From positions 248,001-312,000 of the IMG/VR virus record IMGVR_UViG_3300028676_000003: DNA of 64,000 nucleotides, one strand, 5' to 3'. Shown here in pieces: positions 737 through 58,992 of this stretch. Position 1 is the first letter of the stretch; each line of letters starts with the position of its first letter. The position numbers were made by a program, and so were the translations under genes. The notes below the pieces were generated by a model. That model saw only the letters and a program-made list of their open reading frames with translations. It searched no databases and was not told where the DNA came from.

Positions 737-1861
737 ATGTTAGCAATACAAGAATATATCAAAAAACACGGAATAAATAAGGCAATTTCAGACTTTAATC
801 TAAAATCTAGAGAGTATGAAAACAAAATCTTATTGAAATACGACCAATTATCATCACCAACAATGATGGCAATGGCTGAAATGCAAGATTCTCGTGGTAT
901 TATCCTTGAAAAAGGAACTTGGAAGGTCTTATCACTTGCATTTAGAAAGTTCTTCAACTCAGAAGAAGGAAATGCACATAAAATTGATTGGAATACTGCC
1001 CGTGTACTAGAGAAACTAGATGGTACCCTTATACAATTGTATTGGGATGCACATAAAGGTAAGTGGTTTGCAGGTACTACAGGTACAGCAGAAGGTGAGG
1101 GTGAAGTGAATAATAAAAATGGTACTACATTTAATGACCTTTTTTTCCAAACAGTTGCTGAAAAATACAACTTGGATTTAAACAGACTTGATAAAAAATA
1201 CTGTTTTGTGTTCGAATTAACAACACCTTATAATATAGTAGTGAAGCCACACGGTGAATCATCTGCTACGTTATTAACTATTAGAAACCTTGAGACACTT
1301 GAAGAAGTTTGTTATGAAGAATTACTAAACCACGGTTCAGTATTAGGACTTCCAGTAGTTAAATCATTTGACCTTAATGCTAAGAACGTTGGAGCTTTGC
1401 TTCGTACATTCGAAAACATGCCATGGTCAGAAGAAGGTTATGTTGTTGTTGATGGAAACAATGATAGAATCAAGTGTAAAAACCCAGCTTATGTTGCGGT
1501 TCACCACTTAAAAGGTAAGTCAGCAGAACACAATATCATCACGATTGTTAAATCAAACGAGATTGAAGAATTTGGTTCTACTTTCCCTGAAAGAAAAGAA
1601 GAATTGTACAAGCTTAAGGCTAACTACGATATCCTTTTAGAAAAATTACTTGTAACTTGGGAAGAATTGAAATTACGTAAACCTAAGAATATCATGCCAG
1701 CCGAAAAGAAAAAATATGCGGCCGCTGTATTCGAAGTTTGCGAGAAACATGACTTAAAGCCATTTACAGGTTTATTCTTTGGACTAAACGATGGAAAGGT
1801 AGAAAGTGTTGAAAGCTTCCTTATGAACTACGACGATAAACTCTTATACAAGATGTTATGA
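737..1861 (+). CDS. RNA ligase, T4 Rnl1-like
   Basis: Motifs KFFN, EKLDGTLI (motif I), FELTTPYN.IV, EGYVV and RIKCKNPAY; preceded by a TACCTTTGT promoter at 709. Confidence 0.85.
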   Translation: MLAIQEYIKKHGINKAISDFNLKSREYENKILLKYDQLSSPTMMAMAEMQDSRGIILEKGTWKVLSLAFRKFFNSEEGNAHKIDWNTARVLEKLDGTLIQLYWDAHKGKWFAGTTGTAEGEGEVNNKNGTTFNDLFFQTVAEKYNLDLNRLDKKYCFVFELTTPYNIVVKPHGESSATLLTIRNLETLEEVCYEELLNHGSVLGLPVVKSFDLNAKNVGALLRTFENMPWSEEGYVVVDGNNDRIKCKNPAYVAVHHLKGKSAEHNIITIVKSNEIEEFGSTFPERKEELYKLKANYDILLEKLLVTWEELKLRKPKNIMPAEKKKYAAAVFEVCEKHDLKPFTGLFFGLNDGKVESVESFLMNYDDKLLYKML

Positions 1862-5825: not shown

Positions 5826-6872
5826 ATGAAGAAAATGATTAAATTTCCGTCTATCGAGCAGTTTCGTACAATTAACGCAACTATCCTTAGACAATTCAAT
5901 TTCGTCGGTTTAGACGAAACGGGAGAAGCTATCTACGATACAAACCTCCCAAAACCAAAGCTTTGGTTCAAAGGTAGTGTAAAATTACATGGTACAAATG
6001 CCGCTGTTTGTTACAATACCGCAGGTGGTTTATGGGCACAATCACGTGAAAGCATAATCACAGTTGAAAATGATAATGCAGGGTTCGCATTCTTTGTGGA
6101 AAGTAACAAAGACGCATTCAACCAATTATTCCGTAAAATTCAAGACGAAACAAGTGTTAGTTTTGAACATAATACGGTAAGTATCTATGGTGAGTGGTGC
6201 GGTGGAAACATCCAAAAAGGTGTTGCGATTACAAACTTGCCTAAGTCATTTTTCATCTTTGGTGTGAAAATCTCACCAATTCGTACAAAAGAGCAAGAAG
6301 AAGATAACAAAGAAGTATCATTTTGGGTAGAGTCAAACTATTTAGAGGTTCCTGAAAATAGAATCTACAATGTTGACAGTTTCCAAACATATGCTATTGA
6401 AATCGACTTCAATAACCCTCAATTAGTACAAGACAAATTAACTGAATTAACACTTGCTGTAGAAGCAGAGTGTCCGATTGGAAAAGCTTTCGGATTCTCA
6501 GGTGTTGGTGAAGGTATTGTTTGGAAAACGGAATTGGATGGAGAGGTCCATAGATTCAAAGTTAAGGGTGATAAACACTCTAGTTCTAAGAGCGAGAAGA
6601 TTGTTAGTATTGACGTTGAAAAATTGGAATCAATCCAAAAATTCATCGAATATGCTGTAACAGAAAGTCGCTTCAAACAAGGTCTTGAAAATGTATTCCC
6701 AAATGAAGAACCTATCGAAATCAAAAAGATGGGTGAACTTATCAAATGGGTAGTTAATGACGTTATCAAAGAAGAGACCGACACAATGGTAGCTAACAAT
6801 ATCGAACCAAAAGAGGTTAATAAATACATCTCTACAAGGGTACGTGAAATGTTCATGGCACTAAGTGTTTAA
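5826..6872 (+). CDS. RNA ligase, Rnl2 family
   Basis: Motifs KFPSIEQF, VKLHGTNA, IYGEWCG, GEGIVW and FKVKG. Confidence 0.85.
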   Translation: MKKMIKFPSIEQFRTINATILRQFNFVGLDETGEAIYDTNLPKPKLWFKGSVKLHGTNAAVCYNTAGGLWAQSRESIITVENDNAGFAFFVESNKDAFNQLFRKIQDETSVSFEHNTVSIYGEWCGGNIQKGVAITNLPKSFFIFGVKISPIRTKEQEEDNKEVSFWVESNYLEVPENRIYNVDSFQTYAIEIDFNNPQLVQDKLTELTLAVEAECPIGKAFGFSGVGEGIVWKTELDGEVHRFKVKGDKHSSSKSEKIVSIDVEKLESIQKFIEYAVTESRFKQGLENVFPNEEPIEIKKMGELIKWVVNDVIKEETDTMVANNIEPKEVNKYISTRVREMFMALSV

Positions 6873-33533: not shown

Positions 33534-33618
33534 GGGAGTGTAGCTCAGTTGGTAGAGCAGGATGTATAGGAATGCATACTTTAAATCTGTGTCAATGGTT
33601 CGATTCCATTCACTCTTA
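33534..33618 (+). ncRNA. tRNA-like RNA with an enlarged anticodon arm
   Basis: Canonical D arm (AGCTCAGTTGGTAGAGC) and T arm; about 20 nt in the anticodon-loop position. Confidence 0.6.
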
Positions 33619-33627
33619 CAAAATATT

Positions 33628-34104: not shown

Positions 34105-34902
34105 ATGAGAACAAGAGTAGCACCGTCACCAACTGGAATTTTCCATTTGGGAACACTTAGAACAGCATTATTAAACTATTTACTGGCTAAGGCAAACGGT
34201 GGTGATTTCATTCTCCGTATTGATGATACCGATGTAGTTAGAAATGATGATAAATACATAGATTATATCTATGACCAAATGAAACACTTTGGCCTTAATC
34301 ATGACCTAACGTTTAAACAGTCAGATAGACTAGCACGATATGCAGAAGTTGCCAATAAGATTGGTTTTGCTTCACCTGATGGAATAAAGTTGAATATGGG
34401 TGACTATGATATGGTTATTCTTAGAACAAATGGATATCCAACATATAACTTTGCAAGTATTCTTGATGATTATGACTACGATATCACTGATTTTGTCAGA
34501 GGTGTAGACCACATCAACAATCTAGATAAACAAAAACATATTTGGGACTTGATTGCAAGTGTTTATGGTGATAAGCCTTTTCCAAATGTAATTCATGCTG
34601 GATTGTTATTTGATGGGAAGAGTAAGTTATCGAAAAGAAGCGGAAACGGAACGACAGCTGACTATGTTGACTTTGATAAGGATGCATTATTAAATTGGTT
34701 GTTTAAGATGGGTTGGTCTCATAAGGACCCGAATTTCGATAGAGATTTTCCTTTTTTACTGATGATTCAAATGATTGCTTTCTTTAATGATGGTAATATC
34801 ACGAAATCTAACTGTAAGATTGATAGACCAAAGCTTGATTTTTTGAATAAAAAACATAAAAACTTTAAGAAATTCAAAGAAAGTTTTGGTGAATTCAAAT
34901 AA
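34105..34902 (+). CDS. glutamyl-tRNA-synthetase-family catalytic domain only (GluRS/GluQ-like)
   Basis: RTRVAPSPTG.FHLGTLR, LRIDDTD, PTYNFA..DD..ITD.VRG.DH, KLSKR. 265 aa with no anticodon-binding domain. Confidence 0.85.
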   Translation: MRTRVAPSPTGIFHLGTLRTALLNYLLAKANGGDFILRIDDTDVVRNDDKYIDYIYDQMKHFGLNHDLTFKQSDRLARYAEVANKIGFASPDGIKLNMGDYDMVILRTNGYPTYNFASILDDYDYDITDFVRGVDHINNLDKQKHIWDLIASVYGDKPFPNVIHAGLLFDGKSKLSKRSGNGTTADYVDFDKDALLNWLFKMGWSHKDPNFDRDFPFLLMIQMIAFFNDGNITKSNCKIDRPKLDFLNKKHKNFKKFKESFGEFK

Positions 34903-37893: not shown

Positions 37894-38529
37894 ATGGCAG
37901 TAACAAAACCAACAGCGAAAAAAGGAAGCGTAGCTACAGAGCAAATCGTAGGGCAAGCGGCTCAACAAATCACTAAAGCAGTAGCAGAATTAGCAGGAGC
38001 TACAAAAACTATCGAAACACTTGTTTCTCAATCTGAGGAATTAACACTTTTGGTAGCTAACAAAGAAGAACAAATTAAAGATTTAGATGTTCAATTCGCA
38101 GAAAAAGAGCGTCAATTAAACGTTAACTTGGATTTAAGTTTCAAAGCTAACGCTGAGAAAATGGTAAGCGAAAATTTATCTGCAAATGGTAAAGTAGCTA
38201 TCTCTTCTACAGAATTGAAAGAATTACGTTCTGAGTTAGAAACTGTAAAATCAGGTACAGAAGCATTAGTGAAAAAAGAGACTGCAATCATTGCGTCTAC
38301 GTTGAAATCTCAACACGAGAATGAAATCAAATTGATTCACTCTGAAAACAAAGCTATTGCCGCTGAAAACGCTGCTAAGTTAGGTTCGTTAACAAAACAA
38401 AACGAGTTCTTAGAAGAGCAAGTAACTAAATTGTACTTACAATTAGACGCTGAAAGAGCGGCTGGTACAGAAAGAGCAAAAGCTGGTTCAATCGGGAACA
38501 TCACTGTTGGAGAAACAGGTCGTAAGTAA
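37894..38529 (+). CDS. coiled-coil hypothetical protein
   Basis: A/E/K/L-rich helical protein; promoter at 37833. Confidence 0.7.
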   Translation: MAVTKPTAKKGSVATEQIVGQAAQQITKAVAELAGATKTIETLVSQSEELTLLVANKEEQIKDLDVQFAEKERQLNVNLDLSFKANAEKMVSENLSANGKVAISSTELKELRSELETVKSGTEALVKKETAIIASTLKSQHENEIKLIHSENKAIAAENAAKLGSLTKQNEFLEEQVTKLYLQLDAERAAGTERAKAGSIGNITVGETGRK

Positions 38530-38589
38530 TCGTTGACAAAAAGAAAGGTCGTCTAAATCGTAATTGGTTTAGACACCACAAGGTATAAA

Positions 38590-38722
38590 AAAATTCGTTC
38601 AGCATAAAAAGCAATTCCAAACTTCGGGTCGTAGGTTCGAGTCCTACCCTCTCCACTAGGGTTATAATCGGAGAGGTAGCTCGGTCGGATTAGAGCAGAA
38701 GTCAGCAAAAAAAGCAATTTTG
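38590..38722 (+). ncRNA. circularly permuted tRNA (3' half precedes 5' half) flanked by 18-nt direct repeats
   Basis: 3' half ACTTC-GGGTC-GTAGG-TTCGAGT-CCTAC-CCTCTCC-A (38621-38655), 14-nt linker, 5' half GGAGAGG-TA-GCTC...GAGC-A-GAAGT (38670-38702). Confidence 0.75.
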
Positions 38723-38731
38723 ATACCCCAT

Positions 38732-38850
38732 ATAGTAGTCGTCTAGTGGACAAAGACACCGCCCCTGTATTCGTGTATGAGGTTCGACTCCTCTTTAGCA
38801 GTGGTGGTATGACGTAGGTGGAAACATTGGTTCAAATCCAATCTGCTGTA
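38732..38850 (+). ncRNA. Glu/Asp-type tRNA body with an ~50-nt insertion in the anticodon loop
   Basis: ATAGTAG/CTGCTGT, D arm GTCTAGTGGACAAAGAC; the CCGCC/GGTGG stem encloses a second T-arm (GAGG-TTCGACT-CCTC). Confidence 0.6.
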
Positions 38851-38884
38851 CAAAAGGTTCCTCTTGCCTTACAAGAGAATAAAA

Positions 38885-39013
38885 AAGATTATTTCAGCAA
38901 TCAAACAAAAAAAATCTATTTGAAAGAGAGCGGAGGGGTTCGACTCCCCATTTGTCTATAAGAGGTATGACAATTTGTTGTAACGGTAGCACTAATAAAA
39001 AAAATTAATCTTG
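38885..39013 (+). ncRNA. CAGCAA-stem element enclosing a permuted Gln(TTG)-like tRNA
   Basis: AAGATTA...CAGCAA, anticodon arm, GGGG-TTCGACT-CCCC, TTGTC-linker-GACAA, D arm TTGTAACGGTAGCA, closing TAATCTT-G. Confidence 0.6.
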
Positions 39014-39023
39014 ATTCTCACAT

Positions 39024-39094
39024 ACTTCTGTCGTCTAAGTGTTAGGATGCCCTCGTTGTAGAGGGTGATAGTGGTTCAAATCCATTCGGAAGTG
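39024..39094 (+). ncRNA. Glu-type tRNA body with a 6-nt anticodon loop
   Basis: ACTTCTG/CGGAAGT, CCCTC-GTTGTA-GAGGG. Confidence 0.65.
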
Positions 39095-39240
39095 CAAATA
39101 CTGACCTCCACTTCAGTAATTATTTCGTTTTTTAGAGGTGGCTCCCTTTCCACAATTGTGGATATAACCAAAAATTGCTGTGGCAGACCACGGGCATCTG
39201 ATAGGTCAACTATCTATACAGGGGGCGAAACTAAATGTTT

Positions 39241-39292
39241 TAAAATAACTCATCATTTATTTGGTGGGTTATTTTTTTTTACGTACCTTTGT
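39241..39292 (+). terminator. terminator-promoter cassette closing array 2 (duplicated at 55357-55409)
   Basis: AATAACTCATCA-TTTATT-TGGTGGGTTATT, T-run, then TACCTTTGT. Confidence 0.75.
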
Positions 39293-58310: not shown

Positions 58311-58992
58311 ATACGGAAGAACCCTACATTTTGATTTTAGTCCTGGAACTACATCGGATGATAGAATAAATACAGAATGGAGAGAGCAGGTACAGAAGTT
58401 TCCTAAGCTGATTCATACTGAGAAACTAGACGGAGAAAACTCTTGTCTATCTCAATATGGTGTCTTTGCTAGGTCACATGCGGCACCTACACTACATCCA
58501 TGGGCTAACCACTTGAAAGAGAAGCAATCAGTAATTCAACATGACCTAAAAAGCATGGATTTTGAAATATTTGGTGAAAACCTATATGCTTTACACTCAA
58601 TCATTTACCCTGAACTTACAGCACATTTCTATGTGTTTGGAATTAGGGTCCTTGATAAGTGGCTTTCATGGGAAGAAACCAAGCAATGGGCTGGATTCTT
58701 TGATTTTCAAGTGGTTCCCGAATTGGGAATTCAAGATACAACTGAACCTGAACTAATAAAATCAAGGGTACTAGAATTAGGTAGTCAGCCAAGCGTATTT
58801 GGTTCACAACAAAATAATACTGACCCGCTTATTGATTGTACACGTGAAGGTATTGTAAGTAGGAATATAGACGAATACACAGTTGAAGGTTTCAAAGAGA
58901 ATATCTTCAAATATGTGAGAAAAGACCACGTTCAAACGGACGTTCATTGGAGTAAAACAATAACAAGAGCAAGACTAATACACGAATACTAA
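58294..58992 (+). CDS. RNA ligase family protein
   Basis: KY.RT.H..FSPG..SDD, TEKLDGEN, GENLYA.HSI.Y, REGIV, FKYVR..HVQTD.HW. Confidence 0.85.
   Translation: MAFQDKYGRTLHFDFSPGTTSDDRINTEWREQVQKFPKLIHTEKLDGENSCLSQYGVFARSHAAPTLHPWANHLKEKQSVIQHDLKSMDFEIFGENLYALHSIIYPELTAHFYVFGIRVLDKWLSWEETKQWAGFFDFQVVPELGIQDTTEPELIKSRVLELGSQPSVFGSQQNNTDPLIDCTREGIVSRNIDEYTVEGFKENIFKYVRKDHVQTDVHWSKTITRARLIHEY

What the first reader, a model, noticed from the sequence alone, without database searches (positions are those of the whole stretch)
38590..38722. Circularly permuted tRNA gene bounded by 18-nt direct repeats
A well-formed 3' half (anticodon 3' strand, T arm, acceptor 3' strand, A73) precedes a well-formed 5' half (GGAGAGG, D arm, GAAGT), and all stems pair across the halves. 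It is flanked by TCAGCATAAAAAGCAATT (38599-38616) and TCAGCAAAAAAAGCAATT (38702-38719). Permuted tRNAs are known in some algae and an archaeon, where a splicing endonuclease matures them; I do not know of bacterial or phage examples. The repeats suggest a circular intermediate, and the phage encodes three RNA ligases.
Basis: partly seen in the sequence, partly recalled or inferred. Interest (0 to 1): 0.85.

Follow-up and report, generated by a model that had tools for sequence, protein, structure and literature searches.

The report
Phage Y-RNA-like tRNA mimic
The "permuted tRNA" is real in layout, but relatives show it is a small structured RNA that imitates a tRNA with a sealed acceptor end, mounted on a conserved stem like bacterial Y RNAs; it is probably not a gene for a working tRNA.

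Summary
At 38621-38702 a tRNA 3' half precedes a 5' half, every stem pairs, and the 18-nt repeats exist (0 of 2000 shuffles).

Related huge phages carry one or two such modules at the same spot. They do not share the direct repeats. They share flanks that pair into a two-part basal stem, supported by compensatory changes. In relatives the acceptor end is a sealed hairpin, in one case capped by a UUCG tetraloop, and the anticodon-like loops vary between orthologues.

This layout is the one published for bacterial YrlA-type Y RNAs: closing stem, T arm, closed acceptor hairpin, D arm, closing stem. Rfam YrlA is the best non-tRNA match, at 29 bits here and 41 in relatives. A model built only from phage modules finds the Ro60-linked Y RNAs in three Bacteroidota genomes.

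These phages encode no Ro60, RtcB or splicing endonuclease, and the modules lack the Ro60-binding motif. I read it as a new variant of Y-RNA-like tRNA mimic. A second copy lies at 38875-39019. No expression data could be obtained, and maturation into a real tRNA is not excluded for this copy.

The parts
38582..38586 (+). Outer basal helix, 5' strand (GGTAT); pairs with 38723-38727
   Evidence: RNAalifold and covariation across 24 modules. All four modelled pairs of this helix show changes on both sides. The MFE fold also forms it.
38590..38595 (+). Inner basal helix, 5' strand (AAAATT); family consensus AAGAUUR. Pairs with 38716-38721.
   Evidence: G-C becomes A-U in this copy, and A-U swaps with G-C between module types a and b.
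38598..38604 (+). Conserved unpaired motif TTCAGCA (family UUUCAGCAA)
   Evidence: Invariant in the 13 modules of alignment A1. In the 24-row alignment A2 one weak row (the 57-bit hit in L260) lacks it. Its function is unknown.
38599..38616 (+). Upstream copy of the 18-nt direct repeat (5' linker)
   Evidence: Not found in any relative.
38621..38625 (+). Closing stem, 5' strand ACTTC (equivalent to tRNA positions 39-43); pairs with GAAGT 38698-38702
   Evidence: Two of its pairs are compensatory changes relative to the CG/CG closing pairs of relatives.
38626..38647 (+). Variable loop GGGTC plus T arm (GTAGG TTCGAGT CCTAC)
38648..38676 (+). Closed acceptor hairpin: CCTCTCC, A73, the loop CTAGGGTTATAATC, then GGAGAGG
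   Evidence: The stem is 7 bp with a 15-nt loop (A73 plus the 14-nt spacer).
38679..38696 (+). D arm (GCTC, GGTCGGATTA, GAGC). Position 14 is G rather than the usual A.
38698..38702 (+). Closing stem, 3' strand GAAGT (equivalent to tRNA positions 27-31)
38702..38719 (+). Downstream copy of the 18-nt direct repeat. It overlaps the A-rich 3' linker and the inner-helix 3' strand.
38716..38727 (+). Inner helix 3' strand AATTTT (38716-38721), conserved G (38722), outer helix 3' strand ATACC (38723-38727)
38875..39019 (+). Second, paralogous module (type b). It has outer helix GAGAAT/ATTCTC, inner helix AAGATTA/TAATCTT, the small hairpin TCT-ATTTGAA-AGA, a T arm, a closed acceptor hairpin and a D arm.
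   Evidence: Model R1 scores 108.5 bits. Only this module and the first one score above 30 bits in the whole 368.5-kb genome. Orthologues are present in relatives.
39242..39282 (+). Terminator-like hairpin with a T run, at the end of the intergenic RNA cluster
   Evidence: This is a consensus scan only.

Best explanation
The locus encodes a non-coding RNA of about 146 nt (38582-38727, + strand) that mimics a tRNA and has the architecture of a bacterial YrlA-type Y RNA.

Shown by sequence and comparison:
- The 5' and 3' flanks pair into a two-part basal stem, about 5 bp outer and 6-7 bp inner, separated by a small asymmetric internal loop.
- Next come a conserved unpaired UUUCAGCAA motif and A-rich linkers.
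- A short closing stem then carries a tRNA-like head: variable loop, T arm, an acceptor stem sealed by a loop, and a D arm.
- The phage has two such modules in tandem. Related huge phages, probably of Bacteroidota, have the same pair at the same position.

Inferred:
- The RNA is not matured into a decoding tRNA.
- It acts as a protein-binding scaffold or decoy. The L-shaped head would engage tRNA-recognising proteins such as RNase P, TruB or Dus-type modifiers, the CCA-adding enzyme, RNA-repair enzymes or anticodon nucleases.
- The conserved stem and motif would recruit a dedicated partner, which is not a phage-encoded Ro60.
- In this copy the 7-bp acceptor stem with A73 and a loose loop could allow RNase P cleavage, as happens with Mycobacterium smegmatis YrlA.
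- The 18-nt direct repeat is a lineage-specific partial duplication of linker sequence, not part of the mechanism.
For: - Rfam's best non-tRNA match at 38623-38700 is the tRNA-like domain of YrlA (model positions 23-85, 29.3 bits, E 5e-4). Module a of relatives matches YrlA full length at 41 bits. Ro60-linked Bacteroidota Y RNAs score in the same range, 34-54 bits.
- Conservation: 24 modules from IMG/VR and metagenome contigs share the flanks and the T, acceptor and D order.
- Covariation: 95.3% of cells pair, against 36-48% when partners are slid. Seventeen of 25 pairs change on both sides, including both basal helices.
- Model R1, built only from phage modules, finds only the two modules in its own genome (107 and 108 bits; next best 30).
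- In Bacteroidota genomes R1's three true full-length hits lie next to TROVE/Ro60 genes on the same strand. In one case the hit sits between rsr and rtcB.
- Acceptor ends are sealed. Forms seen are a UUCG tetraloop on 7 bp, a 3-nt loop on 8 bp, a 9-bp stem, and extended helices.
- The literature describes YrlA as resembling circularly permuted tRNAs with closed acceptor stems, modified by TruB and DusA. M. smegmatis YrlA is cut by RNase P and receives CCA.
Against: - There is no expression evidence. No RNA contig covers 38550-39240.
- YrlA membership criteria fail. Rfam scores are below the gathering score of 69. There is no GNCGAAN0-1G motif or its Bacteroidota form UGYCGUAG. No TROVE gene is found in this phage, in four related records, or in 135 kb of module-bearing loci.
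- TROVE is rare in the one possible host order sampled, 3 of 121 genomes. A Ro60 partner is therefore doubtful.
- Most relatives carry a hairpin with a canonical 7-nt, U33-type loop stacked on the closing pairs. YrlA lacks this feature, and it would also fit a true tRNA precursor.
- Folding energy alone is not significant (z = -1.5).
- Any model of the T arm, closed acceptor, D arm order would find YrlA. The genome hits therefore show shared architecture, not necessarily common descent.
Confidence: 0.72

Rival explanations
1. It is a true circularly permuted tRNA gene. The precursor is cut in both flanks and the ends are joined by one of the phage's RNA ligases into a circle. RNase P and a 3' nuclease then open the acceptor loop and CCA is added, giving a working tRNA (Gly-UCC here; Asn, Lys or others in relatives).
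For: - All four stems pair and the rejoined sequence is called a tRNA.
- This copy has a perfect 7-bp acceptor stem, A73 and a 14-nt spacer.
- The phage encodes one Rnl1-like and two Rnl2-like ligases.
- In relatives an intact hairpin with a 7-nt U33-type loop stacks on two closing pairs to give a 5-bp anticodon-arm equivalent, with compensatory changes in its stem. A nick-sealing ligase could in principle close it.
- The YrlA structure paper itself raises possible processing of such RNAs.
Against: - No bulge-helix-bulge motif forms at the junction, and no splicing endonuclease or RtcB is encoded.
- Joining through the repeats leaves a 21-nt loop.
- Relatives have sealed acceptor hairpins with tetraloops or extended helices.
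- The break point differs between modules: 26/27, 28/29 or 31/32.
- The 'anticodons' differ among orthologues: GUA, GGA, AGA, UUA and UUG in type b; GUU, CUU and UUU in type a.
- The discriminator bases I read are C, U or A, which do not fit bacterial Asn or Lys identity rules as I recall them.
- The genome already has standard genes for Gly-UCC (2), Lys-UUU (3) and Asn-GUU (3).
- Position 14 is G in this copy.
Confidence: 0.07
2. It is a Y RNA in the strict sense. The phage RNA binds the host's Ro60 (Rsr) through its basal stem and redirects or blocks the host Rsr, PNPase and RtcB RNA-repair and decay machinery during infection.
For: - The architecture is the same as that of Ro60-linked RNAs in Bacteroidota, and the phage-derived model finds those RNAs.
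- The long terminal stem with an internal loop, followed by single-stranded linkers, is the general Y RNA plan.
Against: - The motifs shared by Ro60-linked Bacteroidota RNAs (UGYCGUAG, UACUUCG) are absent from the phage modules.
- The basal stem sequence is unrelated to theirs.
- Ro60 is found in only 3 of 121 genomes of one candidate host order.
- The host is unknown.
Confidence: 0.15
3. It is inert debris: the junction of two tandem tRNA copies left by deletion, a one-off rearrangement, an assembly artefact, or a tRNA-derived attachment site.
For: - tRNA arrays in this genome are full of duplicates, and junctions between tandem tRNAs weakly match the same model.
- The 18-nt repeat looks like a duplication scar.
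- One relative (L007) has lost the modules by deletion.
- The window's two copies are the lowest-scoring full-length family members apart from L208.
Against: - The element is conserved at the same position in phages whose neighbouring protein is only 63-69% identical.
- Compensatory changes maintain six helices, including flanks that have no tRNA origin.
- The sequence is identical in an IMG/VR contig filed under a different sample number.
- I did not look for an integrase or for an att-like duplication of a host tRNA end, and I saw neither in passing.
Confidence: 0.04

Closest known systems
YrlA-type bacterial Y RNAs (Rfam RF02553; Salmonella, Mycobacterium smegmatis, mycobacteriophages)
   Same: - Same order of elements: closing stem, variable region, T arm, closed acceptor stem-loop, UA, D arm, closing stem.
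- Mounted on a stem formed by the RNA's two ends.
- Canonical T-loop and D-loop residues.
- It is the best Rfam match after tRNA.
- Described in print as resembling circularly permuted tRNAs.
   Different: - No Ro60 gene nearby or anywhere in the phage.
- No GNCGAAN0-1G motif.
- The basal stem has its own conserved sequence (AAGAUUR, UUUCAGCAA, YAAUCUUG).
- Most family members add an anticodon-arm-like hairpin that YrlA lacks.
- Scores are below Rfam's gathering threshold.
   Same: tRNA-like head, two-part terminal stem, several copies in tandem, and detection by the phage-derived model.
   Different: They carry UGYCGUAG and UACUUCG motifs and sit in rsr or rsr-rtcB operons. The phage modules have neither feature.
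Circularly permuted tRNA genes of Cyanidioschyzon merolae and other algae, and of Thermofilum pendens
   Same: The 3' half lies upstream of the 5' half, the acceptor is initially closed by an intervening loop, and the ends of the transcript pair (paper summary).
   Different: Those precursors form a bulge-helix-bulge motif that is cut by the splicing endonuclease and ligated into a circle. They give tRNAs with fixed anticodons. Here there is no such motif or enzyme, the acceptor hairpins are sealed, and the loops vary.
Two-piece (permuted) tmRNA
   Same: A permuted tRNA-like domain in bacteria, with the T arm ahead of the acceptor 5' strand.
   Different: ARAGORN finds no tmRNA. Rfam tmRNA_permuted scores 17 bits against a threshold of 47. 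There is no tag reading frame, and a full D arm is present.

Membership tests
YrlA / bacterial Y RNA | tRNA-like domain ordered T arm, closed acceptor stem-loop, D arm, enclosed by a stem | tested here: met
   Direct reading, Rfam alignment to YrlA positions 23-85, and covariation.
YrlA / bacterial Y RNA | Score at or above the Rfam RF02553 gathering threshold (69 bits) | tested here: not met
   29.3 bits for this copy and 41 bits for relatives. Ro60-linked Bacteroidota RNAs also fall short at 34-54 bits, so this criterion is weak for this phylum.
YrlA / bacterial Y RNA | Conserved 5' motif GNCGAAN0-1G, thought to contact Ro60 (PMC4201824) | tested here: not met
   The motif is absent from all 24 modules, and so is the Bacteroidota form UGYCGUAG.
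YrlA / bacterial Y RNA | Encoded within about 4 kb of an rsr (TROVE) gene on the same strand | tested here: not met
   No TROVE match in the 368.5-kb genome, in four related phage records, or by tblastn in 135 kb of module-bearing loci.
YrlA / bacterial Y RNA | Bound by Ro60/Rsr; modified by TruB and DusA | not testable with these tools
   Needs biochemistry.
Circularly permuted tRNA gene | 3' half upstream of 5' half, with all cloverleaf stems able to form | tested here: met
Circularly permuted tRNA gene | Leader and trailer form a bulge-helix-bulge motif at the junction, and a splicing endonuclease is available | tested here: not met
   The flanks pair 12-25 nt away from the closing stem, as plain helices. 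There is no tRNA-intron endonuclease domain or RtcB.
Circularly permuted tRNA gene | Joining yields a 7-nt anticodon loop, and the anticodon is conserved among orthologues | tested here: not met
   Joining through the repeats gives a 21-nt loop. The loops of orthologues differ.
Circularly permuted tRNA gene | The intervening sequence at the acceptor end can be removed to give a free discriminator and CCA end | tested here: inconclusive
   This copy is compatible: 7 bp, A73 and a 14-nt spacer. Relatives have tetraloop-capped or extended sealed stems.
Circularly permuted tRNA gene | Circular intermediate or ligated junction detectable in RNA | not testable with these tools
   The available runs gave no contig over the element.
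Permuted tmRNA | Detected by ARAGORN or Rfam, with a tag peptide frame | tested here: not met

The most novel reading that the evidence does not exclude
The modules are real permuted or split tRNA precursors. RNase P and CCA addition open the acceptor loop, as in M. smegmatis YrlA. The phage's nick-sealing Rnl2-type ligases then close the anticodon arm after the flanks are trimmed. This would give phage-made tRNAs through a protein-only, non-archaeal route, the first permuted tRNA maturation pathway in the bacterial world. A milder form of the same idea is a two-piece, chargeable tRNA-like molecule held together by the basal stem.
Probability: 0.07. Interest if true: 0.9.

Novelty: new variant of a known kind. 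Interest (0 to 1): 0.52.

Why it matters
Y-RNA-like tRNA mimics are known next to Ro60 genes in bacteria and in some mycobacteriophages, but what their tRNA-like head binds is still unknown.

This family is a conserved pair of such RNAs in huge environmental phages that have no Ro60. They carry their own conserved stem motif, and in most members an added anticodon-arm look-alike. This suggests the tRNA-mimic scaffold is used with other partners. One possibility is a decoy or adaptor in the contest over tRNAs between phages and hosts, since the same genomes carry about 60 tRNAs and three RNA ligases.

The family offers a compact, testable RNA for finding that partner. It also gives annotators a warning: permuted-looking tRNA pieces in phage tRNA arrays can be functional RNAs of this kind.

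Tried and rejected
- Nucleotide search of the phage collection found nothing near the element. Only a 70%-identical stretch in an unannotated 462-kb uncultured phage matched a neighbouring gene.
- Sequencing runs: one soil metatranscriptome contig stops at 38512. Wastewater RNA contigs only cross-match T arms. Low-coverage DNA contigs break at 38550 and resume at 39251. No statement on expression or junctions is therefore possible.
- A 15-nt flank pattern alone gave mostly chance hits in IMG/VR. It needed filtering for a T arm and the 3' flank.
- The two-flank pattern in prokaryote genomes gave no true module among the first 120 rows.
- In large genome batches the model lost weak true hits to stricter filters and returned tandem-tRNA junctions.
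- The TATAAT in the acceptor loop as an internal promoter: rejected. Relatives have 3-9-nt loops there, and the genes here carry TAnnTTTG-type upstream motifs.
- The Rfam-suggested pairing CAACAA/UUGUUG in one relative: rejected because it is not conserved in other modules.
- A codon-like AAC in the 5' linker pairing with the GUU loop: rejected as inconsistent across modules.
- Minus-strand ORFs of 51 and 68 aa over the element: rejected in favour of RNA, because substitutions are compensatory in helices.
- Folding energy z-scores are uninformative.

Full report
**Setting.** The window is bases 248001-312000 of a 368.5-kb virus record judged complete. It comes from peat metagenomes. ARAGORN finds 62 tRNA genes in the genome, 40 of them in the window and many duplicated or odd. 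Genes around the finding are preceded by TAnnTTTG-like motifs (TACCTTTG seen). From general knowledge of Bacteroidota promoters, this suggests a Bacteroidota host. That is an inference.

**The observation.** ACTTC, GGGTC, the T arm, CCTCTCC and A73 occupy 38621-38655. A 14-nt spacer follows. Then GGAGAGG, the D arm and GAAGT occupy 38670-38702. All stems are perfectly paired. ARAGORN calls the rejoined halves tRNA-Gly(UCC), but only if seven linker bases are chosen as the loop or if a 14-nt intron is allowed. The 18-nt repeats match 17 of 18 and never arise in shuffles. An IMG/VR contig filed under a different sample number has the same sequence, which argues against an assembly artefact, although I did not verify that the two assemblies are independent. 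The three RNA ligases exist, one Rnl1-like and two Rnl2-like, all inside the window.

**What relatives show.** The protein encoded just upstream (37894-38529) has relatives at 63-69% identity in six IMG/VR contigs. In five of them the same intergenic position holds a permuted tRNA-like element, usually two in tandem. The sixth has a deletion there. Pattern scans of IMG/VR and metagenomes added more, giving 24 distinct modules.

None of the relatives has the direct repeat. They share the following features:
- A variable outer helix of 5-7 bp formed by the two ends of the element.
- An inner helix AAGAUUR/YAAUCUU followed by an invariant G.
- An unpaired UUUCAGCAA motif and A-rich linkers.
- The tRNA-like core in the order T arm, acceptor hairpin, D arm.

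RNAalifold recovered both flank helices without guidance. On the 24-sequence alignment 95.3% of cells pair, against 36-48% when partners are slid. Seventeen of 25 pairs change on both sides. That alignment is fitted to the model, which favours the structure. Examples include the A-U/G-C switch between the two module types and the G-C to A-U change in the window's own copy. With its flanks the window element spans 38582-38727. A second module lies at 38875-39019. A covariance model built from the phage modules finds only these two in the whole genome (107 and 108 bits; next best 30), and one or two per related phage.

**Evidence against maturation into a tRNA.**
- The acceptor end is a sealed hairpin in relatives. 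Forms seen are 7 bp capped by UUCG, 8 bp with a 3-nt loop, a 9-bp stem, and stems extended by extra pairs.
- Most relatives have a small hairpin with a 7-nt, U33-type loop stacked on two closing pairs. Its 'anticodon' varies: GUU, CUU or UUU in type a, and GUA, GGA, AGA, UUA or UUG in type b.
- The window's first module lacks that hairpin. It has a 5-bp closing stem instead, and two of its pairs are compensatory relative to the CG/CG of relatives.
- The position where the flanks leave the tRNA body differs between modules: 26/27, 28/29 or 31/32.
- No bulge-helix-bulge motif forms, and the genome has no splicing-endonuclease domain and no RtcB.
- Standard Gly-UCC, Lys-UUU and Asn-GUU genes are already present.

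**What it resembles.** A permissive Rfam scan gave, after tRNA, the tRNA-like domain of YrlA as the best match at 38623-38700 (29.3 bits, E 5e-4). Module a of relatives matches YrlA over its full length at 41 bits. According to the literature, YrlA RNAs:
- are Ro60-associated Y RNAs of bacteria and some phages;
- have a head that is a tRNA mimic with a closed acceptor stem;
- 'resemble circularly permuted tRNAs';
- are modified by TruB and DusA;
- in M. smegmatis are cut by RNase P and receive CCA (PMC4201824; 10.1101/312249).

The phage-derived model's three true full-length hits in Bacteroidota genomes all lie beside a TROVE/Ro60 gene on the same strand. One is 3 kb downstream in a Chryseobacterium, one is 1 kb downstream in a Pseudoflavitalea, and one lies between rsr and rtcB in a third genome. 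Other hits were junctions of tandem tRNAs, plus one unexplained bacterial element.

**Why it is not simply a member of that family.**
- The Ro60-linked Bacteroidota RNAs share UGYCGUAG and UACUUCG motifs. The phage modules have neither, nor the published GNCGAAN0-1G.
- No TROVE gene exists in this phage, in four related records including a complete 362-kb genome, or in 135 kb of module-bearing loci.
- TROVE occurs in only 3 of 121 genomes of one candidate host order.
- All Rfam scores are below the gathering score, although the Ro60-linked Bacteroidota RNAs are too.

The architecture is therefore shared, but the Ro60 link is not shown. The basal stem is a distinct conserved module that presumably binds something else.

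**Mechanism proposed.** Shown: a conserved, structurally constrained RNA with a tRNA-like head on a two-part stem, present as two paralogues at a fixed place in a clade of huge phages, on the + strand, in a cluster that ends at a terminator-like hairpin. Inferred: it works as a scaffold or decoy, with its head recognised by tRNA-binding proteins and its stem and motif by a specific partner. Processing at the acceptor loop by RNase P is plausible for this copy by analogy with M. smegmatis YrlA. The direct repeat is best read as a lineage-specific duplication of linker sequence that accompanied loss of the small hairpin.

**Limits.** There are no expression or end-mapping data, the host is unknown, and folding energy alone is not significant.

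**Verdict.** The best reading is a new variant of Y-RNA-like tRNA mimic (confidence 0.72). The true permuted-tRNA reading stays at about 0.07.

Noticed in passing
window 38732-38850: A tRNA with normal connectivity (Rfam tRNA, 36.7 bits) has a 51-nt insert in its anticodon loop, and the insert contains a T-arm-like hairpin (GAGG TTCGACT CCTC). Orthologues follow the modules in relatives and end in ...CTGTACA. Some carry the same kind of insert and others have enlarged anticodon arms or loops. ARAGORN misses them.
   Followed up: partly
window 39024-39095: A tRNA-like gene with a 6-nt anticodon loop (ARAGORN '???', anticodon 'tg'). The genome also holds class-I-shaped 'Leu' tRNAs of 73-75 nt, His(AUG), Gly(ACC) and a 4-base anticodon call at 33534-33619.
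   Followed up: no
window 39133-39245 (terminator-like hairpin at 39242-39282): A conserved structured-looking RNA (GGTGGCTCCC ... GCTGTGGCAGACCACGGGCATC ... ATACAGGGGGCGAAAC) is shared with L003, L004, L007 and L208. In relatives it is embedded in a longer element closed by a GAACAAAC.../...CTGTTC helix. It has no Rfam match.
   Followed up: partly
window 890-1492, 5976-6566, 58408-58917: One Rnl1-like and two Rnl2-like RNA ligase genes lie in the same 64-kb tRNA-rich region. No RtcB is present.
   Followed up: partly
genome C1:228804-228879 (outside the window): ARAGORN calls a tRNA with anticodon CUA (amber-reading), which hints at stop-codon suppression or recoding in this phage.
   Followed up: no
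window 34105-34902: A 265-aa ORF carries only the catalytic-domain N-terminal part of a class I Glu/Gln tRNA synthetase (Pfam tRNA-synt_1c, E 5e-45).
   Followed up: no
L391 about 1490-1720 (bacterial genome G097): A bacterial chromosome with no TROVE match holds a permuted tRNA-like element: T arm, CAACTCC-A, a spacer of about 70 nt, GGAGTTG, D arm. It is enclosed by a long terminal helix and sits in a tRNA cluster whose leader sequence it shares with the next tRNA-Phe.
   Followed up: partly
L393, L395, L396, L400 (Bacteroidota rsr loci): Ro60-linked Y RNAs of Bacteroidota occur in tandem sets and share UGYCGUAG and UACUUCG motifs. They score only 34-54 bits on Rfam YrlA (threshold 69), so the curated model under-detects them in this phylum.
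   Followed up: partly
L007 4640-4700: One related phage contig keeps the 5' flank and the start of the small hairpin, then jumps to the downstream conserved RNA. This is a deletion at a short GCT-GTGG homology that removes both modules and the odd tRNA, so the RNAs seem dispensable in that lineage.
   Followed up: no
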